Below are positions 7,851 through 57,846 of a DNA stretch of 64,000 bases, one piece after another. Made by a program: the position numbers and the translations under genes. The notes beneath the pieces are model-generated. The model was not told where the DNA came from. It ran no database searches and saw nothing but the letters and a program-made list of their open reading frames with translations. The DNA is from Mytilus edulis (Eukaryota), in assembly GCF_963676685.1 (NCBI RefSeq), contig NC_092356.1, positions 65,348,001 through 65,412,000 on the forward strand. The letters are read 5' to 3'. Position 1 is the first letter of the stretch; each line of letters starts with the position of its first letter.

Positions 7851-9159
7851 TGTTGTTCTCTAAGAATTTATCGACGAGTCATCGACATTTTGTGTATTTG
7901 AAGACAGATCGTTATGCCTATCATCTTCTATTATCAACTTGACAGAAAATGTAGCAGTAACTAAATGACAAAAAAAACAAAGGCATTAAAACATTACACA
8001 TGTAAGTAACCAACTATTAGCTTTTCAAAATGTCAAGCTATTAACCGTGTAATATTCTGAATAAACTATATAGAAAGTTTCAAATAGCTCTTAAAAAAGT
8101 AAGATTTTCTATGATCAAGATAAACACAATGCATTCAATTGCTAATCTTCCTAGGATTGCCAATATTTTTCCGGTAAACTTTTCAGAACCATTTAAACTT
8201 TAAATCAAATATATCTTTCACACTTTTCAGAAATGACGACGAATCCTAGATTTTGCGGTATCTGTGACCAACGCCATATCACAAAGCCCTCAAGTGATTG
8301 GTGTTCCGAATGTAACCAAGCTCTATGTACCGAATGTAAAGATCTCCATGCAATTATTAAAGCTTTACAACATCATTCGTTGATACCAATAGCGAACTAC
8401 CTATCTCTTGGTACCTCTTTTTCTTTAGTTGAGGGACATTGTCCCTTACACGACGACAAATATCAACTGTTTTGTCAATCACATGACTGTTTACTCTGTC
8501 TTACATGTTTAGAAGAACATATGAATTGTGAGAACGTGGTTCGTATCAGTAAGCTAACCAAAGATATAAAAACGTCTGAAATTTTTTTAGAAACTAAAAA
8601 TGGTCTATCGGAGATTATACTCAAGTTATCGAAATTACAAAGTCAGCTTGAGGATAACTTAAGGAATATCAAGATACAAAAAGAATCAGCACTTCGAGAA
8701 ATATATCAGATAAGAGAAAAGATGAATAACCATCTGAATCAAATTGAAAGCGCTCTGAAAACAGAACTATGTGAAATAATGGATGATCAGTGCCACAGTG
8801 GTATTGATATGACGTCTTTACAAGAGGTTAAAAGGGAGAAAGCGAATGTTGAACATTTCCAGCAACAGATGGAAGACCTCAGTAAATATGGATCAGATCT
8901 ACAAACGTTCTTTGACCTACGAAAGATAATTGCAAAAACTGCCACCGCTAATCAGTACTTGCAGACCTTGGCGGACGATGGTAAATTAGATAAAATGACA
9001 TTTACCTGTGAAATCAATAAGCTTATTCCAGACTTCCTTACGGATGTAAAGAGTTTAGGAAAAATCCAATTACAGAAAATTCCTGGTTATATTACACTGG
9101 ATAGTGCAAAAGACGCAAATGCACAGTTGGTAGGTTCGGGAAACAAATCTATTAGTGAT

Positions 9160-11296
9160 CTACAGATTTCTTTTCTGATATTGCATGGTGGGCGTATTTT
9201 ATGAATGTGTTCGATGGAACAGTAATTTTTTTAGATTCTAAACCAGTTACTGCTTGCAAACTGATGCGTGTTTACATAGTGGTGCAGGATATTATGAAGA
9301 TTTTGTTTGTGTGATTGGGACACATATTAACCGAGTTTTAAGAACTATCACTTAAATATTAAAGAGACTATGACTATTGTGTTGTCAACGATGCGATAGG
9401 GACATTTGTGGGCTTATAGACGTGTTGTCGAATCTACACACAACATGACTACAAAATGCATCATTAAGAAAGGTAGTTTTAGAAACAAAACTTTAATGGC
9501 TCAGTTGAGAGAACTTTTCTGGTTGTCGGCTGCACACAATTTTGACATCAGAGCCAAATTTATCAGTGGTCGTAATAATGTAATTGCTGACGCCGCGTCA
9601 AGACTTCATGAACCAGGACAATTATCTAGGCTTTATGATAAACTTTTGAGCCACTTATTTTATATACCGTTTACGACTATCGAGGTACTAAATCACATAT
9701 TTTTTTCACTTTTTTAATGCCAAATGAAGAAACAATGGAAACACAAATGAATATTGGAGAACAGCGTGGCTCGCTTGAAAAGCGAGGGGTGGGCTAGTTC
9801 AATTTCAGGATTTTACCATACCCATCTTAAGCCAAATTATGACCTAAAACCAGTGCCATACACTACCAAAACTGTAGAACTTTACATCGCTTTTCTTGTG
9901 GATGTGAACAACTTTGCGTTTAGCTCGATACGATCGTTCTTGAACATTATTTCTGTGCTGTATAAATCACACGACAAACCGGACCCTATTGCAAGCTGTT
10001 GGAATGGCCGACATTTACTAACTGGTGTCAAACGGGAACTTGGTACTAGTAAAAATTGTAAAACACCTGTTACGCCAGAACTGTGGTTAAGATTTAAGTC
10101 AATTTTAAATCTTTAATGTCCTTATAATATTGTTTTTTGGGCTGCTTGCCTTACAGGTTTTTATGTTTTTTGCGACCAAACAATTTTTTAGTCAAAGGTC
10201 CTTTTAATCCAATTTTGAAATTGAAATTGAAATCAATTTCCGCAGGGTATATGTGCTGCCTTGTGGCTGGGTATGTTTGTAACGCTCAAAGTAACCAAGA
10301 CGCTGCAGTTTCAATCTAAGCTTATTGAGGTAAGTTTTTCCTTTGTTACACGGTCACCAACTTTGTCCGTATGAAGATTTATCCCGTGTGCTGCCTTACC
10401 TGGAGATCCCTTAGATCCTTTATTTAGTTCGTCTGACAAAAGATGTTTGTCTTATACTGTTTGTCTCCAATGCCTTCGTTTTTTGTTACAACACCTTGAC
10501 TGTAATCCTCATAATGGGGACACTCTTTTCGTACGGTTGCTGCCACTTGGGCAGGATCTATAGGTCTTTCGGATAGTGACAATAAATTGTTAGGTTATTG
10601 GTCAAGAGATTGATTTTACGCTATATTGATTTTGATAGAGACCAGCGTCTCAAAGCCATGACGTCTTTCTGTTCTTGATTACCTTCTTTTAAACAACTAC
10701 CCCTTCTTGTTTGGGTTTGGTGTTATATTTTTATTATGTCATATATCATGTACAAGGGTGGTGTTAGGCTTGGGTTACCAATGCAAGCTAATAAAATTGC
10801 CATTATTATATTATTGTTGTTATCTTAGACACCCTTGTCACATCTGCTTGCCAATTAACTAGTAACTCAAAGGTAAAGTGTAATTTAGGAAAAATGTAGT
10901 TTTAACCACGTGTATTAATATCACATGGTTAGCTAGCCTTGAGACGACCTCTCACTAATGCGCAGCTTCGCAGAGATAGTGACCCCATTGAATTGTGATC
11001 AGCTTCGTAAGCATGCAAGCAAATTTTTCCTTAAGCCCCGCCTACCCTCCAAGTAGTTTTACTAAGGGTGTTGTGGGATTTTGCTTTTCTTATTTTTGAA
11101 TATTTTTTGTAGTTGAGTATTAGTAATACTTATTGTTTTATTGTATGGGGTTATATTTTTTATTACGTCATATATCATGTACAAGAGGGGTGTTAGGCTT
11201 TGGGTTACCAAGGAAATAAAATTGCCATTATTTTATTATTGCTGTTATCTTAGACAGCCTTGTCACATCTGCTTGTCAATTAACTAGTGAGGTAAA
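9160..11296 (+). mobile_element. 5'-truncated tyrosine-recombinase retrotransposon (DIRS order, Ngaro/PAT-type split direct repeats)
   Basis: Decayed RT-end/RNase H motifs (DIAWWAYF..FDG, QTDAC, ISGRNNVIADAASR), then tyrosine recombinase (FLRPNN, GHSFRT.AATWA, IKLLGYWS..RYID). The 3' end is repeat B1 (~10719-10877), a spacer (~10878-11146) and repeat B2 (~11147-11296). Confidence 0.88.
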
Positions 11297-11571
11297 TTCA
11301 TACTATCAATTTAAGTGGAGAATTTACTGGATGTCTTATTCTTCCAGATGAAAAAATTGTGCTATGTGATTGTAAAAATAACAGTGACTGCATACAAATA
11401 TTGCATTCACATGGAGATCTCATTTTCAAAATCCCAGCGTCATCCAGCTATTATTCGGATGTAACTATGTTGATAAACAAACGGTAGCTGTAGTTTCAGA
11501 CGTCCAACAGCAAGTATTTATAATAAATGTGGAAACATGCAAACCCCGGATTCATGTTATGCAACAACTCA

Positions 11572-11703
11572 CATTTTAATGTTGTGTCAACATTCTCCTC
11601 TTATATTTAATGCGTTCCTCTCGGTTTTGGTTTGTGACCCAGATTTGTTTTTTTCTATCGATTTATGAGTTTTGAACATCGGTATACTACTGTTGCATTT
11701 ATT
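11572..11703 (+). repeat. SINE-like repeat fragment inserted in the copy 1 propeller; relatives at ~18050-18413, 25010-25330, 29727-29830(-), 38625-38758, 45446-45660(-), 53700-53795, 59870-60060
   Basis: Shared core gatttatgagttttgaaca(g/t)cggtatactactgttgc(c/a)tttattt. Confidence 0.7.
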
Positions 11704-13776
11704 TATGTTGTATTCAACGGGAAGGCATCCAAAGTAGCAATCTTCAAAGAGAAAAGAGTTCTTTCATTGTAAATTGAATCTTAGTCCATTGTCTTCTATC
11801 ACTTTTGTCGACAAAAGAATATTTTATACTAACCAAAAAAGAAATAGTGTGACATGTTGTGATATTGATATGAATAATATCATATGCACGTACAGAGACA
11901 CCTCTGTTTTGAAGGATCTTCGTAGAATTGCACTTGACAATGAAGTAAATGTTTACATTGTTAGTTACATTCAAAATAAACGTGTTCTATTATCTGCACA
12001 CGGACAACAACATAGGCAACTTTTATCGGAAAAAGATGGACTTCTAAAACCTTATGCTATTTGTTATGACAAAAACAAACAAACATCGTCTGTTAATTTT
12101 TAATCGAAAAAATATGGGTTTGATGTAGCAACGAAATTAAACAAATGCGTGTTTTTTAACATTGTTTGCTATTTTATCGTTTTGTTTTATTGGGTTTATT
12201 AACGATGGTATCTGTGTTTTAATGAAAAACAAATAGTAGAGAAACTTGTGTGTAAGATGTTGGCAATTGTGTCTGCAAAATACGAACAAATCATATGTTG
12301 TTAATCTTTGCTTGAATTTCTAATTAGGATCTATACAATTATTAGTCATGTTAGATAATTGTATTAGTCAAACTCTTTGATTTCTTACTTCAACACTGGT
12401 TTTCCTTTCAGCACATGTTTCTGATATAATAATTCAACAGTCTTATTTCTGAAAATTTTGTCAAGACAACGAATTTTCATGTTAAAAAAGTCCATAAAAA
12501 GTAACATCACAAAAATACTGAAATCCAAGGAATATTCAAAACGGAAAGCCCCTCATCAAATGGCAAAATTAAAAGTTAAAACATATCAAACGAATGGACA
12601 ACAACTGTCATGCATGTGTTTAATAGTTAACCTTTAATGGTCTTATCAATTTTCAAAAAAAAAAAAATATTTACTGAATTGTCAAAGTATCCGAAAGGTC
12701 CGAAAAATTGATGTAATGTATAAATCTTTTAACAAATGCAATTACGACATTAAATAATAAAATGAAAACTTACGGCAAAACCTAAGGTGCATTAGTAGCC
12801 AAAATTTCTATCAATAACCATTGAATGAAATATGTTTTTTTCGATCAAACGTTATATAAATTATAAACATGCATTGCATCAATAATTTCAGTAACATTTA
12901 AAAATCAGAAAGTTTTAACATATGATTTTACGCCCCAGTCCCACTAGACCACGATCGCACCACGCTCACCATGATCTAAAACAAATTCAGATCGTGGTGA
13001 GGTCGCGGTATGAGCGGCATGAAAATATAAATTTTCGTTGCTTTCACGATGCTACTACGTCCTCATTACGCTTCTACAACGATCCCGCTACTATTATACC
13101 ATGTTCTCGCTGCGCTTATTCTGCGACGTCACTACGCTTATCAAGATCTTTTAATTAAAAGAAATCTTCTTATCAAGATACTTAAACAAATCGAATCAAA
13201 AAATGTTTGAATATGGCTTTATAATTTTGTGCAATCTATATCTGATAGACATCGCGATAAATTATACTCCATCACAATATATTAGACTCCTTTTACGGAC
13301 AGGACATATACCGAAGGTAACCTAGGTTTATAGAGTAAACTGCACCAGGTCCATCTGCGCGGATGATTTGGACTTCAATAAACTGCCAATGTTAATGTAC
13401 TACTATTAAAACTGGAATTCAATTTCAATATATTTTAGTTATCTGCCTCCTTATAACTAGCGTATGGCAATGCGAAACCATCGTTAGTATTGGCTGCTTT
13501 CAACTGAAAGTTGGATTCATATGACTGCAAATTCGAAACAGTCTAAGAAAGATTGCCTTCTAGAATATTTCCTCTGAAATTCGGAAAAGTTAAAGTCGGT
13601 AGGTGGTATGTTTGATTGCTATACATTGACAGTGATAGAGAGAATATAACTATATTGTTGATTTCTAACACCTATAGTTGGGATATTTTGATTTAAAAAA
13701 AAAAAGGTAGTATTTAAAGTGTGACAGGATGAAATAGAATGTTGATTTGCATGATTGTTTTTACGTATTAATTATA

Positions 13777-14924: not shown

Positions 14925-15229
14925 NNNNNNNNNNNNNNNNNNNNNNNNNNNNNNNNNNNNNNNNNNNNNNNNNNNNNNNNNNNNNNNNNNNNNNNNNNNN
15001 NNNNNNNNNNNNNNNNNNNNNNNNNNNNNNNNNNNNNNNNNNNNNNNNNNNNNNNNNNNNNNNNNNNNNNNNNNNNNNNNNNNNNNNNNNNNNNNNNNNN
15101 NNNNNNNNNNNNNNNNNNNNNNNNNNNNNNNNNNNNNNNNNNNNNNNNNNNNNNNNNNNNNNNNNNNNNNNNNNNNNNNNNNNNNNNNNNNNNNNNNNNN
15201 NNNNNNNNNNNNNNNNNNNNNNNNNNNNN
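14925..15229. other. Assembly gap (N run)
   Basis: Run of n. Confidence 1.
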
Positions 15230-15230
15230 A

Positions 15231-18710: not shown

Positions 18711-20393
18711 ATGACGACAAATCATCAATTTTGCAGTATGTGTGATCAACGTCATATCACTAAGCCTTCAAGTGATTGGTGTTCTGAATGTAACCAAGCT
18801 CTATGTACCGAATGTAAAGATCTCCATGCAATTATCAAAGCTTTACAACATCATTCTTTGATACCAATAGAAAACTACCTATCTCTTGGAACATCTTTTT
18901 CTTTAGTTGAGGGACATTGTCCCTTACACGACGACAAATATCAACTAGTTTGTCAATCACATGACTGTTTACTCTGTCTTACATGTTTAGAAGAACATAT
19001 GACTTGTGAAAACGTGGTTCGTATCAGTAAGCTAACCAAAGATGTAAAAACGTCTGAACATTTTATAAAAGCTAAGACGGGTGTATCGGAGATCATACTA
19101 AAGTTTTCGAAATTACAAAACCATCTTGAGGAGAACTTAATTGAACTCAAGACAAAGAAAGAATCAGCACTTCGAGATATAACTCAGATTAGAGAAAATA
19201 TGAATACTCATCTAAATCAAATTGAAAGCACTCTGAAAACAGAACTATGTGAACTAGTAGATGATCAGTGCAACCGTGGTATTGATATGACTTTACAAGA
19301 GGTTATAAAGGAGAAAGCGAATGTTGAACATTTCCAGCGACAGATTGAAGACCTCAGTAAATATGGATCAGATCTACAAACGTTTTTTGGCATGCGAAAG
19401 ATAATTGCAAAAACTGCCACCGCAAATCAGTACTTGCAGACATTCGCGGACGATGGTAAATTAGATAAAATGACATTTACCTGTGAAATCAATAAGCTTA
19501 TTCCAGACTTCCTTGCGGATGTAAAGAGTTTAGGAATAATCCAATTACAGACAATCCCTGGTCATATTACACTGGAAAGTGCAAAGAATACAGAGGCACA
19601 GTTGGTAGGTTCGGGTAACAAATCTATAAATTATATCAAACTCAGTTTGGTTCATACTATCAATCTAAGTGGAGAATTTACTGGATGTTGTATTCTTCCA
19701 GATGAAAAGATTGTGCTATGTGATTGTAAAAATAACAGTGACTGCATACAAATATTGCATCCACATGGAGAACTCATTTTAAAAATCCCCACAGCATCCA
19801 GCTTTCATTCGGATGTAACATATATTGATAAACAAACCGTAGCTGTATCATCAGATGTACAACAGCAAGTACATGTCATAAATGTAGATACAAAATCCAT
19901 AAGATCCATCCCAACTCCTGATTCATGTTATGGAACAACGCACAAAGAGGGATCACTGCTATGTTGTATTCAAGGGAAAGGCATACAAAGTATCAATCTT
20001 CAAAGTGAGAAAAGTACTACGATTGTAAACTGCAATCTTAGTCCATTGTCTTCTATTGCTTTTGTCGACAAAAGAATATTTTATACTAACCAAAAAAGAA
20101 ATAGTGTGACTTGCTGTGATATGGACACGGGTAATATTATCTGGACATTTAGAAACGCATCTGTTGTGAAAGATCTTCGTAGAATTGCAGTTGACAATGT
20201 GGGAAATGTTTACATTGTTAGCTACAATCAGAATAAACTCGTTGTATTGTCTGCCGACGGACAACATCATAGACAACTGCTATCGGAAAAAGATGGACTT
20301 CTTAAACCTTATGCTATTTGTTATGACAAAAACAAAAATCGTCTCCTGATATGTAATCGAAAAAATACCGGCTTTTTGTTTGATGTATCATAA
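18711..20393 (+). CDS. RING-less TRIM-like protein, copy 2 (subfamily A): B-box1, B-box2, coiled coil, NHL-like beta-propeller, 560 aa
   Basis: Uninterrupted ORF with two Cys/His B-boxes. The C-terminal half has repeated blade motifs (FTGCCILPDEKIVLCD, IAVDNVGNVYIVS, PYAICYDKNKNRLLIC). Preceded by acceptor tttttcag|aa|ATG. Confidence 0.92.
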   Translation: MTTNHQFCSMCDQRHITKPSSDWCSECNQALCTECKDLHAIIKALQHHSLIPIENYLSLGTSFSLVEGHCPLHDDKYQLVCQSHDCLLCLTCLEEHMTCENVVRISKLTKDVKTSEHFIKAKTGVSEIILKFSKLQNHLEENLIELKTKKESALRDITQIRENMNTHLNQIESTLKTELCELVDDQCNRGIDMTLQEVIKEKANVEHFQRQIEDLSKYGSDLQTFFGMRKIIAKTATANQYLQTFADDGKLDKMTFTCEINKLIPDFLADVKSLGIIQLQTIPGHITLESAKNTEAQLVGSGNKSINYIKLSLVHTINLSGEFTGCCILPDEKIVLCDCKNNSDCIQILHPHGELILKIPTASSFHSDVTYIDKQTVAVSSDVQQQVHVINVDTKSIRSIPTPDSCYGTTHKEGSLLCCIQGKGIQSINLQSEKSTTIVNCNLSPLSSIAFVDKRIFYTNQKRNSVTCCDMDTGNIIWTFRNASVVKDLRRIAVDNVGNVYIVSYNQNKLVVLSADGQHHRQLLSEKDGLLKPYAICYDKNKNRLLICNRKNTGFLFDVS

Positions 20394-22146: not shown

Positions 22147-22392
22147 NNNNNNNNNNNNNNNNNNNNNNNNNNNNNNNNNNNNNNNNNNNNNNNNNNNNNN
22201 NNNNNNNNNNNNNNNNNNNNNNNNNNNNNNNNNNNNNNNNNNNNNNNNNNNNNNNNNNNNNNNNNNNNNNNNNNNNNNNNNNNNNNNNNNNNNNNNNNNN
22301 NNNNNNNNNNNNNNNNNNNNNNNNNNNNNNNNNNNNNNNNNNNNNNNNNNNNNNNNNNNNNNNNNNNNNNNNNNNNNNNNNNNNNNNNNNNN
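22147..22392. other. Assembly gap (N run) at the position homologous to the first gap
   Basis: Run of n with the same flanks as 14925-15229. Confidence 1.
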
Positions 22393-25618: not shown

Positions 25619-27275
25619 ATGACGACAAATCGTCAATTTTGCAGTATATGTGAACAACGTCATATCACTAAGCCTTCAAGCGACTGGTGTTCCGAATGTA
25701 ACCAAGCTCTATGTACCGAATGTAAAGATCTCCATTCAATTATCAAAGCTTTACAACATCATTCTTTGATACCAATGGCGAACTACCTATCTCTTGGTAC
25801 CTCTTTTTCTTTAGTTGAGGGACATTGTCCCTTACACGACGACAAATATCAACTGTTTTGTCAATCACATGACTGTTTACTCTGCCTTACGTGTTTAGAA
25901 GAACACATGACTTGTGAAAACGTGGTTCGTATCAGTAAGCTAACCAACGATGTAAAAACGTCTGAACATTTTATAAAAGCTAAGACGGGTGTATCGGAGA
26001 TCATACTAAAGTTTTCGAAATTACAAAACCATCTTGAGGAGAACTTAATTGACCTCAAGACAAAGAAAGAATCAGCACTTCGAGAAATAACTCAGATTAG
26101 AGAAAATATTAATAATCATCTAAATCAAATTGAAAGCGCTCTGAAAACAGAGCTATGTGAAATAGTTGATGATCAGTGCCACAGTGGTATTGATATGATT
26201 TTACAACAGGTTATAAAGGAGAAAGCGAATGTTGAACATTTTCAGCAACAGATTGAAGACCTCAGTAAATATGGATCAGATCTACAAACGTTCTTTGGCA
26301 TGCGAAAGATAATTGCAAAAACTGCCACCGCAAATCAGTACTTGCAGACATTCGCGGACGATGGTAAATTAGATAAAATGACATTTACCTGTTAAATCAA
26401 TAAGCTTATTCCAGACTTTCTTGCGTATGTAAAGAGTTTAGGAATAATCTAATTACAGACAATCTCTGGTCATATTACACTGGAAAGTGCAAAGAATACA
26501 GAGGCACAGTTGGTAGGTTCGGGTAACAAATCTATAAATGATATCAAACTCAGTTTGGTTCATACTATCAATCTAAGTGGAGAGTTTACTGGATGTTGTA
26601 TTCTTCCAGATGAAAAGATTGTGCTTTGCGATTGTAAAAATAACAGTGACTGTATACAAATATTGCATCCACATGGAGAACTCACTTTAAAAATCCCCAC
26701 AGCATCCAGCTTTCATTCGGATGTTACATATATTGATAACCAAACTGTAGCTGTATCATCAGATGTACAACAGCAAGTACATGTCATACAAAATCCATAA
26801 GATCCATCCCAACCCCTGATTCATGTTATGGAACAACGCACAAAGAGGGATCACTGCTATGCTGTATACAAGGGAAAGGCATACAAAGTATCAATCTTCC
26901 AAGTGAGAAAAGTACTACGATTGTAAACTGCAATCTTAGTCCATTGTCTTCTATTGCTTTTGTCGACCAAAGAATATTTTATACTAACCAAAAAAGAAAT
27001 ATTGTGACTTGCTGTGATATTAATACGGGTAATATCATCTGGACATTCAGAGACGCATCTGTTGTGAAGGATCTTCGTAGAATTGCAGTTGACAATGTAG
27101 AAAATGTTTACATTGCTAGTTACAGTAAAAATAAACTCGTTGTATTGTCTGTCGATGGACAACATCATAGGCAACTGCTATCGGTACAAGATGGACTATT
27201 AAAACCCTATGATACTATGATATTTGTTATGACAAAAACAAAAATCGTCTTTAGATTTTAAATCGAAAAAAGTTT
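25619..27275 (+). pseudogene. TRIM-like copy 3 (subfamily A), nonsense and frameshift pseudogene
   Basis: Near-identical to copy 2, but GAA>TAA at 26393, CAA>TAA near 26450, a 10-nt deletion near 26790 and a short duplication frameshift near 27210. The ORF pieces 25619..26395, 26510..26800 and 26944..27261 tile the protein. Confidence 0.9.
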
Positions 27276-38344: not shown

Positions 38345-38880
38345 TTCATACTATCAATTTATTGGAGAATTTACTGGATGTTGTATTCTTCCAGATGAAA
38401 AAAATGTGCTATGTGATTGTAAAAATAACAGTGACTGCATACAAATATTGCATTCACATGGAGAACTCATTTTCAAAATCCCAACGTCATTCAGCTATAA
38501 TTCGGATGTAACACATATTGATAAACAAACGGTAGCTGTATCAACAGCAAGTACATATACTAGATGTGGACACACAATCCATAAGATTCATCCAAACCCC
38601 GGATTCATGTTATGCGACAACGCACATTTTAATGTTGTGTCGACATTCTCCTCTTATATTTAATGCGTTCCTCTCGGTTTTGGTTTGTGACCCGGATTTG
38701 TTTTTTTTCTATCGATTTATGAGTTTTGAACATCGGTATACTACTGTTGCATTTATTTATGTTGTATTCAACGGGAAGGCATCCAAAGTATCAATCTTCA
38801 AAGAGAAAAGAGTTTTTTCATTGTAAATTGTAATCTTAGTCCATTGTCTTCTATCACTTTAGTCGACAAAAGAATATTTT

Positions 38881-38983
38881 TTTTTTTTTTATTATTTTTA
38901 TTCAACAACAAATTGCACTTTCTGCTGTTAACAATATACCTCACCAGTCCAGCATACCAGTGAAGAGTCCCTGTTTGTTAATC
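38881..38983 (-). mobile_element. 103-bp poly(A)-tailed retroposed insert with 15-bp TSD
   Basis: acaaaagaatatttt is duplicated at 38866-38880 and 38984-38998. The minus strand ends ..gaataaaaaataataaaaaaaaaa. The insert is absent from the paralogous site in copies 1, 2 and 3. Confidence 0.85.
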
Positions 38984-40017
38984 ACAAAAGAATATTTTAT
39001 ACTAACCAAAAAAGAAATAGTGTGACATGTTGTGATATTGATATGAATAATATCATCTGCACGTACAGAGACACCTCTGTTTTGAAGGATCTTCGTGGAA
39101 TTGCAGTTGACAATGAAGGAAATGTTTACATTGTTAGTTATAGTCAATATAAACTTGTTGTATTATCTGCACACGGACAACAACATAGGCAACTTTTATC
39201 GGAAAAAGATTGACTTTTAAAACCTTATGCTATTTGTTATGACAAAAACAAACAAATATCGTCTGTTAATTTTTAATCGAAAAAATACGGGTTTTTTGTT
39301 TGATGTAGCAACGAAATTAAACAAATGCGTGTTTTTTTTACATTGTTTGCTATTTTATCGTTTTGTTTTATTGGGTTTATTTACGATGGTATATGTGTTT
39401 TAATGAAAAACAAAAAGTCTCTCAAGTAAGTAGAGAAACTTGTGTGTAAGATGCTGGCAATTGTGTCTGCAAAATACGACCAATTCATATTTTGTTAATC
39501 TTTGCTTGAATTTCTAATTAGGATCTATACAATTATTAGTCATGATAGATAATTGTATTAGTCAAACTCTTTGATTTCTTACTTCAACACTGGTTTTCTT
39601 TTCAGCACACGTTCTGATATAATAATTCAACAGTCTTATCTTTCTGAAAATTTCTATCAATAACCATCGAATGAAACATGTTTTTTCGATCAAACGTTCA
39701 ATAAATTATAAGCATGCATTGCATCAATAATTTCAGTATTATTTAAATGATCAGAAAGTTTTAACATATGATTTTACGTGTAATGTTGTTTACTTATTTC
39801 AAACTATTTTCCATCAAATTTTTAATACAAGTACACATAACACTGTATAGCCACGGTCAAATTTACCCAACCATACAGACCAACGTATTGTCTTTTGTCT
39901 GGTTAAAGTTGATACGTAGTTTGTGGACTACCATTTTATACGACCGCAAAAATTTTAATGTTTTGGTCGTATATTGCTATCACATTGGCGTCGTCGTCGT
40001 CGTCCGAATACTTTTAG

Positions 40018-40625: not shown

Positions 40626-40630
40626 GAGTT

Positions 40631-43666: not shown

Positions 43667-45352
43667 ATGGCATCAAATCCTACATTTTGTGGTATATGTG
43701 ATCAACGTCATATCACAAAGCCTTCAAGCGACTGGTGTTCCGAATGTAACCAAGCTCTTTGTACCGAATGCAAAGATTTCCATGCACTTTCCAAAGCTTC
43801 ACAAAACCATTCCACGATAGCGGTATCTAACTACTTAGCTCTTGGCTCCTCCTTTTCTCAAATAGAGGGACACTGCTCTGTGCACGACGAGAAATACCAA
43901 TTATTTTGCCAACCCCATGACTGTTTATTATGTCTTTCGTGTTTAGAAGAACACGCGAAGTGTGAAGCCGTCGTTCCTATCAGTAGGTTAACCAAAGATG
44001 TCAAAACTTCTGAAAGTTTTTTGGACAATCAAAAGAGTCTATCGGACATCATATTAAATCTTTCAAAAATACAATGTCATCTAGAGGGAAATGTTCAGGA
44101 TATTAAAAAACAGAAAGAATCATTTCTTCAAGAAATAATTCAAATAAGAGAACAGATTGACAGCCATCTGAATCAAATTGAAAACAATCTGAAAACAGAA
44201 TTAGATAAACTAGTTGATGATCAGTGCAACACAAACATTGGCAAGACTTTGAAAGAGATACAAAAGGAGCAAACGAAGATGGAAAATTTTCAGCAGCAGA
44301 TAAATGTCCTTAATGAATATGGATCAGATTTGCAAATCTTCTTTGGCCAACGAGAAATTTCATTAAAAACGGAAACCACCTATAAGTACTTGCAGGCATT
44401 CGAAGACAATGGTAGCTTAAATAAAATGAGAATTTCTCATAAGATTGATAGACTGATTTTCGCATTTTTAAAAGAAGTAAAGAGTCTATGCTCGATTCAG
44501 GTACAGAAAATTCCTAGTGGGATTGTCTTGGAGAGATCAAAACACAAACAGGCGCAATTAGTTGGTGTAAAAAAAAGTTCTATCAATGATATCAAACTCA
44601 AATTAGAACATACTTTCAAATTAAGGGATGATGTTAGCGGGTGTTGTTTTCTCCCAGATGGAAAGCTTGTTCTTTGTGATCGTTCGCGTAATGATAGTGT
44701 AATAATATTGCATCCACATGGAGAATTGATGTTTGAAACTTCAATGTCGCCAAGTTTTGCTTTTGATGTGGCATATAATGATGACAACACTGTAGCTGTA
44801 TCATCAGACTACCCTTCCTACAAGCAAATAAATATTATAAACATAGATACAAAGACAATAAGGTCTATCCGTACTGAAGATGCATGTTCTGGCATCACAC
44901 ACAAAGAGGAATCACTAATTGTTTGCGTTAGAGGTAAAGGTATACAAAAAGTCAATAAACAAAGTGGGGAACGTACTTCTATTGTGTCCTGTAAATTAGG
45001 TTCGTGGTCTTATATTGTTTCTAGTGACAATAAACTATATTATACGAACAGAGATGACAATACCGTAACATGTTGTGATATGGGAGGTAATATTATCTGG
45101 ACATTTAAAGACGAGAATGTATTGAAGGATCCTCGTGGTATAGCAGTTGATAATACAGGAAATATTTATACTGTCAGTAACAATAATAATACACTAATTG
45201 TGCTGTCTGCCGACGGACAAAAAAGAAGACAACTCTTATCAAAAGACGATGGACTTCACAATCCGAATGCTTTAGCTTATGACAAAATTAGAAATCGTCT
45301 TTGCGTGTTAAATTTAAAAAATGCCGGATATTTATTTGACGTAACATTTTGA
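43667..45352 (+). CDS. RING-less TRIM-like protein, copy 7 (subfamily B)
   Basis: Start inferred at ATG 43667 (ttttaacag|ca|ATG), in frame with the track ORF 43601..45352. Intact B-boxes, coiled coil and propeller (DPRGIAVDNTGNIYTVS), ending GYLFDVTF*. Confidence 0.92.
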   Translation: MASNPTFCGICDQRHITKPSSDWCSECNQALCTECKDFHALSKASQNHSTIAVSNYLALGSSFSQIEGHCSVHDEKYQLFCQPHDCLLCLSCLEEHAKCEAVVPISRLTKDVKTSESFLDNQKSLSDIILNLSKIQCHLEGNVQDIKKQKESFLQEIIQIREQIDSHLNQIENNLKTELDKLVDDQCNTNIGKTLKEIQKEQTKMENFQQQINVLNEYGSDLQIFFGQREISLKTETTYKYLQAFEDNGSLNKMRISHKIDRLIFAFLKEVKSLCSIQVQKIPSGIVLERSKHKQAQLVGVKKSSINDIKLKLEHTFKLRDDVSGCCFLPDGKLVLCDRSRNDSVIILHPHGELMFETSMSPSFAFDVAYNDDNTVAVSSDYPSYKQINIINIDTKTIRSIRTEDACSGITHKEESLIVCVRGKGIQKVNKQSGERTSIVSCKLGSWSYIVSSDNKLYYTNRDDNTVTCCDMGGNIIWTFKDENVLKDPRGIAVDNTGNIYTVSNNNNTLIVLSADGQKRRQLLSKDDGLHNPNALAYDKIRNRLCVLNLKNAGYLFDVTF

Positions 45353-48012: not shown

Positions 48013-48024
48013 ATCTTTCGCCTC

Positions 48025-54391: not shown

Positions 54392-54446
54392 ATGTTGAGC
54401 TGCTGTCATCTTTGCATTTAAACTACCTCTTATTAACTTATATTAA

Positions 54447-55064: not shown

Positions 55065-55302
55065 TTAAGGCACTTCCTTATGTAACATCCGATCAATATT
55101 ATGTCACAATTATTATGTACCTATAGAACAAGATTTGCATACTTTAAAATTGAGTTCTAAATTGGTCTTCAATATTGGGAATGTTGAAATAATCATTTTC
55201 AATTAAAATAAATACAGATATACAATGAGAGTTTGACTCCAAATGTGTTTTGTCAACGAATGCACCATCAGTTGTCTTCAAAAATCAATTATCATAGTAA
55301 TT

Positions 55303-55414
55303 TAAGAGGGACGAAAGATACCAAAGGGACAGTCAAACTCATAAATCTCAAACAAACTGACAACGCCATGGCCAAAAATAAAAAAGACAAACAGAAAAAC
55401 AATAGTACACACGA
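55303..55414 (-). repeat. Penelope-like 3' tail fragment
   Basis: aagaggggacgaaagataccaaagggacagtcaaactc..aatagtacacacgaca. Confidence 0.75.
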
Positions 55415-56166
55415 CATCCCGCCATTATCACTGTAAAACAAGAGTTATCAGGTAAACAGTACGTCATACGGTCATATGAATAAACGACTTCCTTGTTGAT
55501 ATTCCGGCAACATCGTAAGGTAAACAAAAGGTACGTGTTTAAGTAGCATAGAAACATTTTGGTGTGTGTATAAGTGTGTGTGTATGTGTGTTTATTTCCG
55601 TCGTAAACTGATATGTCAGATTATTCTAAATCCTCATTCTTTATTCTGCTGTTTCAAAACATGCATGGTGACTCATTTATATATAAATATATATATGTGT
55701 CTTAAAATAGCAACAATCAAAATTTATCTAGGCGTGGATCAGTTTGAAAAGAGATTTATTACATCACTGCTGTATAGTTGTATACATCTTCCCGCCCCCT
55801 CGTGTCACTTAGTTCAGTCGTCTTAATTAGCTAAATAGATCGACTGGTCACTTAGTAAAGTATACTTGTCAGGCAATTAAATGAAACTATTTTGTAGAAA
55901 ATTAAAACATCTTAAGCGTGTTTTCCCTGTAATTTATAGTTTCAATCCTGAATCAGCCAAAATAAGGCTCCTAAATCTTGAACCAATCATAATTTCTCAA
56001 ACATTTGGGAATCCGTCATATCCATACTCTCCCATGAAGTCACTCTTGTTCGAACATATTTACCTTTTAACGATTTCTAGACCATAGGCCACTTTTTTTG
56101 TCAGTTACCCACCCGTTGATATAGTGTAAGTATGCGTAATTATCGTCTCACCTTCTCTTTTCAGCG

Positions 56167-57846
56167 ATGGCATCAAATCTTAAATTTTGCGGTATATGTG
56201 ATCAACGTCATCTCACAAAGCCCTCAACTGACTGGTGTCCCGAATGTAATCAACCTCTATGTGCCGAATGCAAAGATTTCCATGCACTTTCCAAAGCTTC
56301 ACAAAACCATTCCACGATAGCAATAGCAAACTACTTAGCCCTGGACTCCTCTTTCCGCAAAGTTGATGTACACTGCTCTGTACATGATGACAAGTACGTA
56401 CTGTTTTGTCTAACGCATGATTGTTTACTCTGCCTGACGTGTCTAGAGGAGCACACAAAGTGTGATGACGTCGTTCGTATCAGTAAGTTAACCAAAGATG
56501 TCAAAACTTCCGAAAGTTTCGTTGTCACTCAAAAGAGTCTATCAGAAATCATATTGAACCTTTCAAAAGTACAATGTCATCTCGAGGAAAATGTTCAGGA
56601 TATAAAGAATCAAAAAGAATCAATTCTCCGGGAAATAGCTCATATTAGGAAAAAGATCGACAGCCATCTCGATAAAATTGAACAATCTCTAAAAACAGAA
56701 TTATGCAAAGAGGTTGATAATCAGTGCAATAACATTATTTGCAAGACTCTGGAAAACATTAAAATAAAGAAAACAAATATAGAAAAATGTCAGCAGCAAA
56801 TGGATGAACTGAAAAGATATGGATCAGATCTTCAAACGTTCTTTGGTTTGCAGGAGATATCAGCAAAGACAAGTACTACTGACCAGTATTTACAGACATT
56901 AGATGACGATGGCAGCTTGAACAGAGTGACGATTTCCTGTAAAATTGATAGAAAGGTTTCAGAATTTATTGAAGAAGTAGCAAGTTTAGGGACCATACAG
57001 GTGCAGAAAGTTACGAGTCAACTTATCCTAGAGAGATCAAAAGACAAACATGCACAGTTAGTCAGAAACAAATCTACCAATGCTATCAAGCTCAAGTTGG
57101 TGAATACTATCAAATTAGATGCATGTGTCACCGGATGTTGTTTTCTTCCTGGTGGAAAAATTGTTCTTTGCGATCGTTCAGAAGAGAACCTTGTACAAAT
57201 ATTAAATCAATACGGAAAATTTATTTTTGAAGTTTCCATAACCCCCTATTTTGCTTTTGACGTTACGAGTATTGATGACAAAACTGTAGCTGTATCATCA
57301 GACAATCCCAACCGGAAGCGAATTAATATCATAGATGTGGAAACAAAAACAAGGAGGTCAATTGCTACTGCAGATAAATGTTATGGAATTACACACAAAG
57401 ATGGATCACTTATTGTTTGCGTCCAAGGGAAAGGACTACAAACTGTCAAGACCCACAGTAAGGAAAGTACTACGGGTGTACCATGTGATTTAGGTTCTTG
57501 TTCTTATATTACTTCCTGGGACAACAAAATATATTACACGAACAACAAAAACCACACCGTAACATGTTGTGATACGGCAGATAATATTATCTGGACATTT
57601 CAAGACGAGAATGTATTGATGGATCCTCGTGGTATAGCAGTTGACAATGCGGGAAATGTTTACATTGTAAGTAGCAGTCAAAATAAACTAATCGTGCTTT
57701 CAGCCGACGGCCAACAAAGTAAACAACTTTGGTCAAAAGACGACGGGCTTGTGGAGCCATATGCAGTGGCCTATGACAAGATAAAAAGTCGTACTTGCGT
57801 TTTTAATTTGCAAAATAACGGATATTTGTTTGACGTAATATTTTGA
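56167..57846 (+). CDS. RING-less TRIM-like protein, copy 8 (subfamily B), 559 aa
   Basis: Uninterrupted ORF after tctttcag|cg|ATG with the same architecture. AATAAA at 57946 is about 100 nt after the stop. Confidence 0.92.
   Translation: MASNLKFCGICDQRHLTKPSTDWCPECNQPLCAECKDFHALSKASQNHSTIAIANYLALDSSFRKVDVHCSVHDDKYVLFCLTHDCLLCLTCLEEHTKCDDVVRISKLTKDVKTSESFVVTQKSLSEIILNLSKVQCHLEENVQDIKNQKESILREIAHIRKKIDSHLDKIEQSLKTELCKEVDNQCNNIICKTLENIKIKKTNIEKCQQQMDELKRYGSDLQTFFGLQEISAKTSTTDQYLQTLDDDGSLNRVTISCKIDRKVSEFIEEVASLGTIQVQKVTSQLILERSKDKHAQLVRNKSTNAIKLKLVNTIKLDACVTGCCFLPGGKIVLCDRSEENLVQILNQYGKFIFEVSITPYFAFDVTSIDDKTVAVSSDNPNRKRINIIDVETKTRRSIATADKCYGITHKDGSLIVCVQGKGLQTVKTHSKESTTGVPCDLGSCSYITSWDNKIYYTNNKNHTVTCCDTADNIIWTFQDENVLMDPRGIAVDNAGNVYIVSSSQNKLIVLSADGQQSKQLWSKDDGLVEPYAVAYDKIKSRTCVFNLQNNGYLFDVIF

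What the first reader, a model, noticed from the sequence alone, without database searches (positions are those of the whole stretch)
8233..57846. Eight-copy tandem array of RING-less B-box/coiled-coil/beta-propeller genes with a fixed N-terminus and a diversifying propeller
Seen: the first B-box (C(D/E)QRH(I/L)TKPS(S/T)DWCxECNQxLCxECKD) is almost invariant across copies, while propeller loops differ strongly (SSDVQQQV, SSDHHYYKQI, SSDNSQNKQI, SSDYPSYKQI, SSDNPNRKRI; DCKNNSDC, DRSRNNY, DRSEENL). Half of the copies are dead. Known: TRIM-NHL propellers bind RNA or protein, B-box/coiled coil drives dimer and higher-order assembly, and TRIM-like genes are expanded in bivalves. Inference: a birth-and-death repertoire of intracellular sensors that share an assembly module, vary the ligand-binding face and must recruit E3 activity in trans. 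This is the best candidate for an uncharacterised system in the window.
Basis: partly seen in the sequence, partly recalled or inferred. Interest (0 to 1): 0.8.

Follow-up and report, generated by a model that had tools for sequence, protein, structure and literature searches.

The report
Mussel RING-less B-box/NHL gene array
A blue-mussel chromosome carries a head-to-tail array of TRIM-like genes that lack the RING finger; half the copies are dead, and the copies differ most on the ligand-binding face of their propeller domain, which fits a varied intracellular binding repertoire whose ligand and role are still unknown.

Summary
The window (Mytilus edulis by homologue names, C13:65348001-65412000) carries eight same-strand paralogues of a ~560-aa protein with B-box1, B-box2, coiled coil and a six-bladed NHL propeller.

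- **State of the copies:** four are dead. A fifth keeps its ORF but has lost the last propeller strand.
- **Extent:** the array continues beyond both window ends. Both N gaps lie in spacers.
- **RING-less:** confirmed at mRNA level for copy 8. It has a non-coding exon 1 with an in-frame stop, a 634-nt GT..AG intron, and an acceptor 2 nt before the ATG.
- **Selection:** my M1a/M2a tests find positive selection only in the propeller.
  - In this array the signal is marginal (p=0.024) and is lost when the propeller halves get their own trees.
  - It is strong in two sister clusters (p=4e-7 and 1.7e-15) and absent in a third.
  - It is absent in all four N-terminal halves.
  - Selected sites fall on the BC/DA-loop (top) face and never on bottom-face loops.
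- **B-box 1:** its near-invariance is partly nucleotide-level, since synonymous divergence is low there too.
- **Not tested:** immune role, ligand, and E3 recruitment in trans.

The scan noted the same kind of array three times on other DNA of this genome. Verdict: a real feature, a new variant of a known kind.

The parts
8233..9152 (+). Copy 1 (subfamily A), N-terminal part up to codon ~306. Dead.
   Evidence: tblastn. blastn against copy 2 breaks at this point.
9153..11296 (+). ~2.1-kb insertion that splits copy 1. It is a transposon fragment with a weak tyrosine-recombinase N-terminal-like ORF at 9754-10116.
Evidence: 91% identical to the insertion in copy 6. Phage_int_SAM_4, E=2.8e-4, below the Pfam cut-off.
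11297..12130 (+). Copy 1, propeller part, with further frameshifts.
   Evidence: HSPs lie in three frames.
14925..15229 (.). Assembly gap (N) in the spacer between copies 1 and 2.
   Evidence: No gene-homologous HSP lies between 12130 and 18606.
18711..20393 (+). Copy 2 (subfamily A), intact, 560 aa.
   Evidence: ORF. Pfam B-box and beta-propeller hits.
22147..22392 (.). Assembly gap (N) in the spacer between copies 2 and 3.
   Evidence: No gene-homologous HSP lies nearby.
25619..27292 (+). Copy 3 (subfamily A), dead. Stops at codons 259 and 278, a 10-nt deletion at codon 390, an 8-nt insertion at codon 533.
   Evidence: Nucleotide alignment to copy 2, 94.1% identity.
29008..30826 (+). Copy 4 (subfamily B), dead. 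TGA at codon 27 (a zinc-ligand Cys), TAG at codon 147, insertions of 29, 5 and 102 nt. The propeller part (29927-30826) is still an open frame.
31686..33356 (+). Copy 5 (subfamily B), open frame of 556 aa. The last ~11 codons are replaced by unrelated sequence, so the final propeller strand (C of blade 6) is missing.
   Evidence: Alignment of the 3' ends. Strand map from the AF2 model.
35313..36230 (+). Copy 6 (subfamily A), N-terminal part. Dead, with a frameshift near codon 118-122.
36231..38344 (+). The same ~2.1-kb insertion at the same codon as in copy 1, with ORFs 36344-36796 and 36830-37327.
   Evidence: 91% identity over 2259 nt. Phage_int_SAM_4, E=0.0021, below the cut-off.
38345..39310 (+). 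Copy 6, propeller part, frameshifted.
   Evidence: HSPs lie in three frames.
43667..45352 (+). Copy 7 (subfamily B), intact, 561 aa.
55466..55530 (+). Non-coding exon 1 of copy 8 (the part seen in an RNA contig). It has TAA at 55521-55523 in the frame of the downstream ATG.
   Evidence: read laying joint in run X2. Sequence and frame.
55531..56164 (+). 5'UTR intron of copy 8, 634 nt, GT..AG.
   Evidence: joint 55528->56163, 'cut +2', and no contig depth over 55555-56145 in X1, X2 or X8..
56167..57846 (+). Copy 8 (subfamily B), intact, 559 aa, transcribed. This is the copy that was modelled.
   Evidence: Contigs of X1, X2 and X8 (three studies) cover 56163-57906 only. AF2 mean pLDDT 82.3. Foldseek hits NHL domains of Brat, Thin, Mei-P26 and TRIM2/3.

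Best explanation
The region is part of a tandemly and segmentally duplicated cluster: at least 14 loci in about 156 kb of a Mytilus edulis chromosome. It belongs to a very large, mussel-expanded family of RING-less TRIM-like genes.

**Gene and protein (shown).**
- Each gene has a non-coding first exon, one 5'UTR intron, and a single coding exon.
- The protein is ~560 aa with no signal peptide. It consists of B-box 1, B-box 2 (16 invariant zinc ligands in total), a ~130-residue TRIM-type coiled coil, a ~60-residue flexible linker, and a six-bladed NHL beta-propeller.

**How the cluster evolves (shown).**
- Evolution is by birth and death. Whole blocks are duplicated, dead copies included.
- Copies decay through stops, frameshifts and a transposon insertion.
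- N-terminal and propeller halves have different histories, which indicates recombination or gene conversion.

**Selection (shown at family level; marginal in this array).**
- The B-box/coiled-coil half is under purifying selection.
- A ring of residues in the B-C and D-A loops is under recurrent positive selection. These loops form the 'top' face, which NHL domains use to bind RNA or protein.

**Mechanism (inferred).**
- The conserved half mediates dimer or higher-order assembly, as it does in TRIM proteins.
- The propeller top face provides many different binding specificities.
- The family would then act as a germline-encoded repertoire of intracellular binders for fast-changing ligands. 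These could be parasite or virus components, mobile-element products or RNAs.
- The output would have to work without an own RING: sequestration, translational repression as with Brat, or partnership with another ligase.

**My odds.**

| Claim | Probability |
|---|---|
| Architecture and RING-lessness | 0.95 |
| Top-face diversifying selection in the family | 0.85 |
| The same in this particular array | 0.55 |
| Immune or antiviral role | about 0.35 |
For: **Copies, breaks and shared insertion:**

**Family size and identity.**
- 78 of 78 scored own-genome matches have E<=9e-97, out of 2595 first-look candidates. 71 of the 78 have no internal stop. They form clusters on C1, C4, C6, C7, C8, C10, C13 and C14.
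- All 29 homologues that carry an NCBI name are from Mytilus species.

**Domains.**
- Pfam B-box and NHL hits.
- 16 invariant Cys/His across 33 members at 29-74% identity to copy 8.
- AF2 model with pLDDT 82.3, helix 116-247 and 24 strands.
- Foldseek hits the NHL domains of Brat, Thin, Mei-P26, TRIM2, TRIM3 and NHL-2 with TM 0.71-0.79.
- The family profile hits TRIM3/Brat/TRIM2/TRIM71 NHL domains (E 3e-14 to 1e-11). It also hits the B-box-coiled-coil of TRIM28 (1.4e-13), TRIM25 (8.5e-8) and TRIM5 (1.5e-6).

**No RING.**
- There is no C3HC4 pattern in six frames of the window.
- 41 of 47 homologues begin with the B-box, and none has a RING-sized extension.
- The acceptor TTTTCAG (TTTTAACAG in copy 7) sits 2 nt before the ATG in 8 of 8 copies.
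- Copy 8 has a spliced 5'UTR with an in-frame TAA.

**Selection (own M1a/M2a code; its M0 lnL equals IQ-TREE's).**

| Cluster | Copies | Propeller LRT | p | N-terminal-half LRT |
|---|---|---|---|---|
| This cluster, intact only | 8 | 7.42 | 0.024 | 0.00 |
| This cluster, plus copy 4's open propeller frame | 9 | 12.8 | 0.0017 | - |
| C14a | 6 | 29.4 | 4e-7 | 0.67 |
| C14b | 10 | 68.0 | 1.7e-15 | 1.45 |
| C7 | 6 | 3.44 | 0.18 | 0.00 |

- Both propeller halves of C14b stay significant when each is given its own tree.
- Sites with posterior >0.8 on BC/DA loops: 1 of 1 (this cluster, 8 copies), 4 of 4 (this cluster, 9 copies), 10 of 12 (C14b), 7 of 7 (C14a), 1 of 1 (C7).
- 0 of 46 bottom-loop codons are hit in any set.
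- Positions 380-383, 444/445, 460/461, 485/486, 503/504 and 529 recur across clusters.

**Which face is 'top'.**
- In TRIM2 the C-terminus lies on the bottom surface and the binding groove on the top (PMC9634614, passages).
- Here the chain ends after strand C of blade 6. That puts the C-terminus on the AB/CD side, so BC/DA is the top face.
Against: **In this array the signal for omega>1 is weak.**
- p=0.024 on a single tree.
- p=0.09 and 0.19 when the two propeller halves get their own trees. Those trees differ, which indicates recombination, and recombination can inflate such tests.
- Only 1 site passes posterior 0.8 with the 8 intact copies.

**Pooled measures are not decisive.**
- Pooled dN/dS is below 1 in every structural class. 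CD (bottom) loops, at 0.81, are as high as BC loops, at 0.72.
- Amino-acid diversity does not differ between faces (Mann-Whitney p=0.34).
- One of the four clusters (C7) shows no signal.

**Method limits.**
- My codon-model code keeps branch-length proportions fixed and ignores recombination.
- The face assignment comes from DSSP strand order, not from coordinates.

**Function.**
- The net charge of the top loops is -5 to +3 in intact copies. That is not the clearly basic surface expected for an RNA binder.
- No expression data after challenge, no ligand and no presence/absence data were obtained.
- Copy 8 had essentially no reads on its coding sequence in the one raw RNA-seq run (X24).
- Dead copies were duplicated. 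So part of the array's growth is neutral.
Confidence: 0.6

Rival explanations
1. Neutral birth-and-death with relaxed constraint. The array is a by-product of segmental duplication in a duplication-prone region. Propeller loops vary only because loops tolerate change. There is no adaptive diversification in this array and no repertoire function.
For: - 4 of 8 copies are dead and a fifth is impaired.
- An already-dead copy carrying the transposon insertion was duplicated at least twice.
- Pooled dN/dS is below 1 in all classes, and bottom-face CD loops are as variable as BC loops.
- The window-cluster LRT is marginal and is lost with per-half trees.
Against: - Intact copies keep whole-gene dN/dS of 0.23-0.42 in all 28 pairs, so they are under selection.
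- Propeller-specific omega>1 classes are found in C14a and C14b, with the same sequences' N-terminal halves as negative controls.
- Selected sites sit at homologous top-face positions across clusters, including this one. 0 of 46 bottom-loop codons are hit.
- Copy 8 is transcribed and spliced.
Confidence: 0.22
2. Brat-like post-transcriptional regulators. The paralogues are RNA-binding translational repressors, each with its own RNA motif. They would serve endogenous regulation (for example germline, development or mobile-element RNA control) rather than pathogen recognition.
For: - The domain order matches the RING-less TRIM-like protein Brat (PMC3503706 Table 1 passages).
- Brat NHL is the best Foldseek hit.
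- NHL top surfaces bind RNA in Brat and LIN-41 (PMC9634614 passages).
- The selected sites lie on that face.
Against: - Identity to Brat NHL is only 15%.
- The top-loop net charge is -5 to +3 and is not consistently basic.
- Recurrent positive selection and rapid gene death are unusual for developmental regulators.
- No RNA-binding data are available.
Confidence: 0.13
3. Assembly artefact. The eight copies are inflated by mis-assembled haplotypes or collapsed and expanded repeats around the two gaps.
For: - Two N gaps lie inside the array.
- Elsewhere in the cluster, one copy has an identical twin on an unplaced contig (L007 = L008).
Against: - Copies differ by 6% to over 40% at nucleotide or protein level and carry distinct lesions. 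That is far more than allelic divergence.
- The gaps lie in spacers.
- DNA-run contigs hold 87-92% of the sampled words of the copy-8 region.
- RefSeq-type models exist for neighbouring paralogues on the same 75-Mb record.
Confidence: 0.05

Closest known systems
Brat / NCL-1 type RING-less TRIM-NHL proteins (Drosophila Brain tumor)
   Same: - Same domain order without a RING: B-box 1, B-box 2, coiled coil, six-bladed NHL propeller.
- Brat NHL is the top Foldseek hit (E=2.1e-13, TM 0.74) and a profile hit (E=8e-14).
- Brat is listed as a 'TRIM-like' member of subfamily C in PMC3503706 (passages).
- Ligand binding on the top surface is reported in PMC9634614 (passages).
   Different: - From my own knowledge, not from a call: Brat is a conserved, essentially single-copy developmental regulator with a basic RNA-binding surface.
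- Here there are hundreds or more intron-poor paralogues in tandem clusters. They show rapid death, positive selection on the top face and no consistently basic loops.
- Orthology to Brat was not tested. Identity is 15%.
Canonical TRIM-NHL E3 ligases (TRIM2, TRIM3, TRIM32, TRIM71/LIN-41; Marin's subfamily C)
   Same: - The B-box/coiled-coil and NHL halves are both homologous at profile level and at fold level (TM 0.77-0.79).
- NCBI names some paralogues TRIM71-like or TRIM56-like.
   Different: - No RING, so no intrinsic RING-type E3 activity.
- No filamin/Ig domain was found by Pfam. A ~60-residue low-confidence linker takes its place.
- Massive lineage-specific expansion.
Fish finTRIM and primate TRIM5alpha (B30.2/SPRY TRIMs)
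   Same: They evolve in the same way: multigene tandem arrays or rapid turnover, a conserved RBCC assembly module, and positive selection concentrated in surface loops of the C-terminal recognition domain. This is from my own knowledge. PMC3845644 was seen only as an abstract in search listings.
   Different: - The recognition domain there is B30.2/SPRY, not NHL, and a RING is present.
- An antiviral function is demonstrated for TRIM5alpha. Nothing is demonstrated here.

Membership tests
TRIM / RBCC family | N-terminal RING finger (C3HC4) | tested here: not met
   - No RING pattern in six frames of the window.
- No RING family among Pfam hits at E<=1.
- The copy-8 mRNA has an in-frame TAA in exon 1, upstream of the ATG.
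- 41 of 47 homologues start at the B-box.
TRIM / RBCC family | One or two B-box zinc fingers | tested here: met
   - Pfam zf-B_box hits with two stretches in each of the 4 proteins. The score is above the cut-off in copy 7 only (29.0 vs 24.1 bits) and 21.5-21.8 bits in the others.
- Invariant C8 C11 C24 C27 C32 C35 H39 H48 and C70 H73 C81 H84 C89 C92 H96 C99 in 33 of 33 members.
TRIM / RBCC family | Coiled coil after the B-boxes, homologous to the TRIM coiled coil | tested here: met
   - AF2 helices 116-218 and 221-247.
- Profile positions 5-207 match TRIM28 (E=1.4e-13), 24-213 match TRIM25 (E=8.5e-8), and 69-202 match TRIM5 (E=1.5e-6).
- Dimerisation itself was not tested.
TRIM-NHL (class VII / subfamily C) | C-terminal six-bladed NHL beta-propeller | tested here: met
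   - 24 strands in 308-558.
- Foldseek hits NHL domains of Brat, Thin, Mei-P26, TRIM2, TRIM3 and NHL-2 with TM 0.71-0.79.
- Pfam NHL is above the cut-off in copies 5 and 8 and below it in copies 2 and 7.
TRIM-NHL (class VII / subfamily C) | Filamin/Ig domain between the coiled coil and NHL (TRIM2/3/71 type) | tested here: not met
   - No filamin family among the Pfam hits.
- Residues ~250-307 are low-confidence linker.
Brat-type RING-less TRIM-NHL | B-box 1 + B-box 2 + coiled coil + NHL, without a RING | tested here: met
   Architecture as shown above. Brat is in parentheses ('TRIM-like') in Table 1 of PMC3503706.
Brat-type RING-less TRIM-NHL | Sequence-specific RNA binding on a basic top surface | tested here: inconclusive
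   I could only compute a crude proxy: the net charge of the BC/DA loops, which is -5 to +3 in the 8 intact cluster copies. No coordinates and no binding data were available.
finTRIM / TRIM5-like restriction-factor TRIMs | B30.2/PRY-SPRY recognition domain | tested here: not met
   The C-terminal domain is an NHL propeller. There is no SPRY hit.
finTRIM / TRIM5-like restriction-factor TRIMs | Positive selection focused on ligand-binding loops of the C-terminal domain, in multigene arrays | tested here: met
   - Strong at family level: C14a p=4e-7, C14b p=1.7e-15.
- Marginal in this array: p=0.024.
- Sites fall on BC/DA loops.
finTRIM / TRIM5-like restriction-factor TRIMs | Antiviral or immune function, induction by infection | not testable with these tools
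   Only the presence of spliced copy-8 transcripts in contigs from three studies of unknown condition could be shown.

The most novel reading that the evidence does not exclude
Mussels hold a very large germline-encoded repertoire of cytosolic receptors: hundreds to perhaps more than a thousand genes. The receptors are built on a RING-less TRIM scaffold. Specificity sits in a crown of positively selected residues, one or two per blade, on the top face of an NHL propeller. This would be an NHL-based counterpart of fish finTRIMs, TRIM5 or plant NLR arrays. It would be renewed by block duplication, domain-level recombination and gene death, and used against viruses, intracellular parasites, mobile elements or transmissible cancer cells.
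Probability: 0.35. Interest if true: 0.75.

Novelty: new variant of a known kind. Interest (0 to 1): 0.55.

Why it matters
- Bivalves lack adaptive immunity, resist infection well, and are known for expanded and presence/absence-variable immune gene families.
- An intracellular family of this size, with a fixed assembly module and a positively selected binding face, would be a candidate for how mussels recognise fast-evolving intracellular threats.
- It would also be the first case I know of in which the NHL propeller, rather than B30.2/SPRY or LRR, is the diversified recognition module.
- The recurrent selected positions (c8 numbering 320, 338, 380-383, 420, 444-445, 460-461, 485-486, 503-504, 529, 548) point to a concrete surface for binding and structural experiments.
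- If the rival (neutral turnover) is right, the array is an ordinary lineage-specific expansion.

Tried and rejected
**Tried without a useful result**
- **Full cluster inventory.**
  - The own-genome tool returns 10 kb per region.
  - The flanks were therefore sampled in alternating 10-kb pieces, plus the loci.
  - Copies in the unsampled halves that one search did not score may have been missed.
- **Literature.**
  - Eight searches found no paper describing a mussel or bivalve RING-less B-box/NHL family or selection on its propeller.
  - PMC8382680 (passages) lists a bivalve-expanded B-box orthogroup, OG708.
  - PMC5549309 and PMC4346834 (passages) held nothing relevant. There the term 'TRIM' matched 'trimmed' and trimAl.
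Orthogroup and pan-genome tables there may already list this family.
- **Copy 8's exon 1 and intron** have no homologue elsewhere in the window. The 5' exons of the other copies remain unknown.
- **Other scans.** There are no tRNA genes in the window. Pfam on ten other ORFs gave only transposon debris.

**Considered and rejected**
- **Processed retrocopies.** Rejected because a 5'UTR intron and a conserved acceptor are present.
- **A hidden RING exon.** Rejected for copy 8 because of the in-frame stop in exon 1.
- **ORFs at 14912-15259, 14921-15256, 22086-22418 and 22111-22449**. These are artefacts of the N runs.
- **The repeat finder family D1**. This is also an N-run artefact.

**Not done**
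Exon 1 was read on its own in the frame set by the joint.
- The big protein search (search of protein representatives) and the protein atlas were not used. No claim here rests on absence of relatives.

Full report
**What is in the window**

The window is G000:C13:65348001-65412000 of a 1.37-Gb assembly. All 29 homologues that carry an NCBI name come from Mytilus species. Paralogues on the same 75,045,669-bp record are named Mytilus edulis.

ORF listing, tblastn with the intact copies and repeat finding give eight paralogues, all on the + strand. In one search, 8 of 8 copies share the first 300 nt. Start-to-start spacing is 10478, 6908, 3389, 2678, 3627, 8354 and 12500.

| Copy | Coordinates |
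|---|---|
| c1 | 8233-9152 + 11297-12130 |
| c2 | 18711-20393 |
| c3 | 25619-27292 |
| c4 | 29008-30826 |
| c5 | 31686-33356 |
| c6 | 35313-36230 + 38345-39310 |
| c7 | 43667-45352 |
| c8 | 56167-57846 |

The copies fall into two subfamilies:
- Subfamily A is c1, c2, c3 and c6, 82-93% identical in protein to c2.
- Subfamily B is c4, c5, c7 and c8, 63-77% identical to each other.
- Identity between A and B is about 55-59%.

**The gaps**

The N runs at 14925-15229 and 22147-22392 lie in the c1/c2 and c2/c3 spacers. No gene-homologous segment is nearer than about 1.7 kb, so no reading frame depends on them. What does depend on them is the order and number of copies across the scaffold joins, which I cannot check. 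I did not fill them and did not use the paralogous block elsewhere to read across them. The ORFs that one search lists over these places, and repeat family D1, are artefacts of the N runs.

**Which copies are dead**

- **c3**, aligned to c2 at 94.1% nucleotide identity, has stops at codons 259 and 278, a 10-nt deletion at codon 390 and an 8-nt insertion at codon 533.
- **c4** has TGA at codon 27 (a zinc-ligand cysteine), TAG at codon 147, and insertions of 29, 5 and 102 nt. Its propeller part is still an open 299-codon frame.
- **c1 and c6** are split at the same point (codon ~306-314) by the same ~2.1-kb insertion. The two insertions are 91% identical over 2259 nt. Both copies carry further frameshifts.
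- The insertion holds ORFs with weak, sub-threshold matches to the N-terminal SAM-like domain of tyrosine recombinases.
  - A third copy with the same break lies outside the window at C13:65471458-65474983. So a gene that was already dead was duplicated at least twice.
- **c5** has an open frame, but after ...NRIFVSNL its 3' end is unrelated to the other copies. It lacks the conserved final strand. By the strand map below, that is strand C of blade 6.

So 4 of 8 copies are dead, one is doubtful, and c2, c7 and c8 are fully intact.

**The array is larger than the window**

and the sampled flanks give the following.
- **Open copies:** C13:65328192, 65344544, 65446771 and 65481945.
- **Broken copies:** 65426903 and 65471458.
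- **Fragments:** 65413517, 65433016 and 65436022.
- **More distant member (40% identity):** 65549932.
- **No copies** were found in the seven sampled 10-kb pieces outside 65.328-65.484 Mb.

Only alternating 10-kb pieces could be fetched, so this is a lower bound.

Genome-wide, the first look found 2595 candidates. All 78 that were scored matched at E<=9e-97. 71 of those 78 have no internal stop, and nearly all are single ~560-codon frames. They sit in clusters on C1, C4, C6, C7, C8, C10, C13 and C14.

**The protein**

- **Pfam** finds B-box (two stretches per protein) and NHL or related propeller repeats. Several of these hits are below the curated cut-offs. No RING is found.
- **Alignment** of 33 family members at 29-74% identity to c8 keeps 16 Cys/His invariant, in the spacing of B-box 1 and B-box 2.
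- **The AlphaFold2 model** of c8 (mean pLDDT 82.3, pTM 0.49) shows:
  - two small zinc-finger-like modules;
  - helices 116-218 and 221-247;
  - a low-confidence linker (~250-307);
  - 24 strands in 308-558, that is six four-stranded blades. The N-terminal strand acts as strand D of blade 6, and the chain ends after strand C of blade 6.
- **Foldseek** against the PDB puts NHL domains on top: Brat (E=2.1e-13), Thin, Mei-P26, TRIM2, TRIM3 and NHL-2, with target-normalised TM 0.71-0.79, rmsd about 3 Å and 15-19% identity.
- **A family profile** against PDB sequences hits two groups:
  - the NHL domains of TRIM3, Brat, TRIM2, TRIM71 and Thin;
  - with its first ~210 positions, the B-box/coiled-coil of TRIM28 (E=1.4e-13), TRIM25 (8.5e-8) and TRIM5 (1.5e-6).
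- **Location.** The N-terminus has no signal-peptide-like segment, as the sequence shows directly. An intracellular protein is therefore the plain reading.

**RING-less: tested three ways**

1. There is no C3HC4-type pattern without stops in any of the six frames of the window.
2. 41 of the 47 family homologues from five Mytilus species begin with the B-box. The other six are shorter fragments, and none has a RING-sized extension.
3. Transcript evidence for c8:
   - Contigs of three runs from three studies cover 56163-57906 and nothing in 55555-56145.
   - One contig of X2 joins 55528 to 56163. The joint skips 634 nt with GT..AG ends, and the true intron is 55531-56164.
   - Read in the frame that this joint imposes, exon 1 has TAA at 55521-55523, four codons before the ATG.
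   - I read exon 1 on its own and made no joined sequence.

All eight copies keep a pyrimidine tract and AG two bases before the ATG, so the architecture is shared.

Two caveats apply. The runs are only guessed to be RNA, although coverage limited to the gene and the spliced joint say so. The single raw RNA-seq run, X24, had next to nothing on the coding sequence.

**Conserved N-terminus, variable propeller**

Nei-Gojobori estimates pooled over the 15 pairs of the six intact subfamily-B copies of the cluster:

| Region | dN/dS |
|---|---|
| B-box 1 | 0.19 |
| B-box 2 | 0.16 |
| Coiled coil | 0.34 |
| Linker | 0.27 |
| Propeller strands | 0.36 |
| A-B loops | 0.32 |
| C-D loops | 0.81 |
| B-C loops | 0.72 |
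| D-A loops | 0.69 |

- Whole-gene values are 0.23-0.42 in all 28 pairs of the eight intact copies.
- The coiled coil is as variable as the propeller core.
- By plain amino-acid diversity the BC/DA face does not differ from the AB/CD face (Mann-Whitney p=0.34).

The near-invariance of B-box 1 is not purely protein-level:
- Between subfamilies, the synonymous difference in codons 1-55 is 0.39 against 0.59 elsewhere. Only 0.45% of 2000 resamples were as low.
- Within subfamily B the figures are 0.29 against 0.36 (7.7% of resamples).

This points to gene conversion or to nucleotide-level constraint at the 5' end.

N-terminal and propeller halves also give different trees. For example, u1 and d2 are close in the N-terminal half and far apart in the propeller.

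**Codon site models**

No PAML or HyPhy was available, so I wrote M0, M1a and M2a likelihoods (GY94, F3x4, IQ-TREE topology and branch proportions, one free scale). The M0 likelihoods reproduce IQ-TREE's to two decimals.

| Cluster | Copies | Propeller LRT (M2a vs M1a) | p | omega>1 class | N-terminal half (1-302) LRT |
|---|---|---|---|---|---|
| This cluster, intact only | 8 | 7.42 | 0.024 | 4.4% of codons, omega 3.1 | 0.00 |
| This cluster, plus c4's open propeller frame | 9 | 12.8 | 0.0017 | 4.7% of codons, omega 3.3 | - |
| C14b (C14:60.91-61.30 Mb) | 10 distinct | 68.0 | 1.7e-15 | 6.5% of codons, omega 5.9 | 1.45 (p=0.49) |
| C14a (C14:57.05-57.16 Mb) | 6 | 29.4 | 4e-7 | 4.6% of codons, omega 6.5 | 0.67 |
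| C7 (C7:40.44-40.52 Mb) | 6 | 3.44 | 0.18 | 0.8% of codons, omega 9.2 | 0.00 |

- When each propeller half of this cluster is given its own tree, the signal is lost (LRT 4.81, p=0.09; LRT 3.29, p=0.19). The two trees differ, which means recombination inside the propeller.
- Both halves of C14b remain significant (LRT 14.7 and 45.1).
- Positive selection is therefore specific to the propeller and strong in the family. For this particular array it is only suggestive.

**Where the selected sites lie**

I classed propeller residues by the DSSP strand order of the model. Topology puts B-C and D-A loops on one face and A-B and C-D loops on the other.

Sites with posterior above 0.8:

| Set | Sites on BC/DA loops |
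|---|---|
| This cluster, 8 copies | 1 of 1 |
| This cluster, 9 copies | 4 of 4 |
| C14b | 10 of 12 (the other two are the first residues of strands C1 and D4) |
| C14a | 7 of 7 |
| C7 | 1 of 1 |

- Bottom-face loops score 0 of 46 codons in every set.
- Fisher tests of the top face against the rest give p=0.0029, 2.3e-5 and 4e-5 for the three sets with several sites.
- The mean posterior in this cluster is 0.127 on top-face loops, 0.035 on bottom-face loops and 0.014 on strands.
- The positions recur between clusters and come from every blade: 380-383, 444/445, 460/461, 485/486, 503/504 and 529.

That BC/DA is the 'top', ligand-binding face follows from passages of PMC9634614. In TRIM2 the C-terminus lies on the bottom surface and the binding groove on the top surface. 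Both termini belong to the sixth blade, as they do here.

I had no coordinates, so this mapping is topological and not geometric.

**What it most likely does**

- **Shown:** the architecture, the lack of a RING, transcription and splicing of c8, birth-and-death with duplication of dead copies, purifying selection on the N-terminal half, and family-level positive selection on the top face.
- **Inferred:** the B-box/coiled-coil half assembles dimers or higher-order structures as in TRIM proteins. The propeller top face supplies diverse binding specificities. The family would then serve as a repertoire of intracellular binders for rapidly changing ligands.
- **Ligand class:** open. The net charge of the top-face loops is -5 to +3 in intact copies, which is not the uniformly basic surface expected of an RNA binder. 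This is a crude proxy.
- **Not tested here:** the immune role, recruitment of an E3 in trans, and presence/absence variation.
- **One hint of fast turnover:** c8 has no cluster mate at 90% identity or more in the protein collection. Its best match in another species is 74% (M. trossulus).

**Comparison with what is known**

- RING-less B-box/coiled-coil/NHL is the architecture of Brat. Marin's classification lists Brat in parentheses as 'TRIM-like' in subfamily C, together with TRIM2, TRIM3, TRIM32, TRIM45, TRIM56 and TRIM71 (PMC3503706, passages). So the missing RING is not new in itself.
- The mode of evolution resembles fish finTRIMs and primate TRIM5alpha. This is my own knowledge; only an abstract listing of PMC3845644 was seen. 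Those proteins use a B30.2 domain and keep the RING.
- A bivalve-expanded B-box orthogroup is listed in PMC8382680 (passages).
- Eight full-text searches found no description of this mussel family or of selection on its NHL face.
- The genes themselves are annotated in public records as 'uncharacterized', 'TRIM71-like', 'TRIM56-like' or 'B box-type domain-containing'.

**Earlier notes of this scan**

Three notes on other pieces of the same genome (s1-841902, s1-838859, s1-841892) describe the same kind of array and reach similar readings. I saw them only after my own tests. They agree with my results but are not independent evidence.

**Verdict**

This is a real feature, correctly observed. 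It is a new variant of a known kind: a TRIM-like multigene family whose diversified recognition module is an NHL propeller and which has no RING. Interest is moderate. The family-wide top-face selection is a clear and testable result, but lineage-specific TRIM-like expansions in bivalves are expected, the signal in this array itself is marginal, and function is unknown.

Noticed in passing
window 9153-11296 and 36231-38344; also G000:C13:65472399-65474152 (L051): The same ~2.1-kb transposon fragment sits at the same codon of three copies. It has weak tyrosine-recombinase N-terminal-like ORFs, and the two window insertions are 91% identical. A dead, interrupted gene was therefore propagated by block duplication.
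   Followed up: partly
window 53585-54372 and 54964-55554: Stretches upstream of copy 8 have contig word depths of hundreds to thousands in the three RNA-like runs, and reads in the raw RNA-seq run, with many loose ends. They are probably high-copy, transcribed repeats.
   Followed up: no
window 8233-8400, 18711-18880 and the same codons of the other copies (codons 1-55): Synonymous divergence is lower in the first 40-55 codons than in the rest of the gene: 0.39 vs 0.59 between subfamilies. This suggests gene conversion or nucleotide-level constraint next to the splice acceptor and start codon.
   Followed up: partly
L036 (G000:C14:60978910-60980874) and L037 (G000:C14:60983016-60984980); also G000:C1135:18219-19883: Two family members with identical proteins lie about 2.4 kb apart on opposite strands, that is an inverted duplicate. 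A third identical match sits on an unplaced contig.
   Followed up: no
L007 (G000:C13:65480445-65485121) and L008 (G000:C796:10500-15176): A cluster copy and a copy on an unplaced contig give identical scores and the same ORF. This is likely a haplotig or an unplaced duplicate of part of this cluster.
   Followed up: no
window 56167-57846 (copy 8): Copy 8 has no cluster mate at 90% identity in the protein collection, and its best hit in another Mytilus species is 74% identical. This hints at fast turnover or presence/absence variation.
   Followed up: no
window 3981-4394 (-) and 62991-63461 (-): Transposon debris outside the array. One is an ORF with a weak DDE_3 endonuclease match (E=0.004). 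The other is a 156-aa ORF with no Pfam hit that looks like part of a reverse transcriptase. That impression is mine only.
   Followed up: partly
window 31028-31210 and 58042-58251: The 3' flank of copy 8 shares a short 77-79% identical stretch with the spacer between copies 4 and 5. This is the only flank homology found for copy 8.
   Followed up: no
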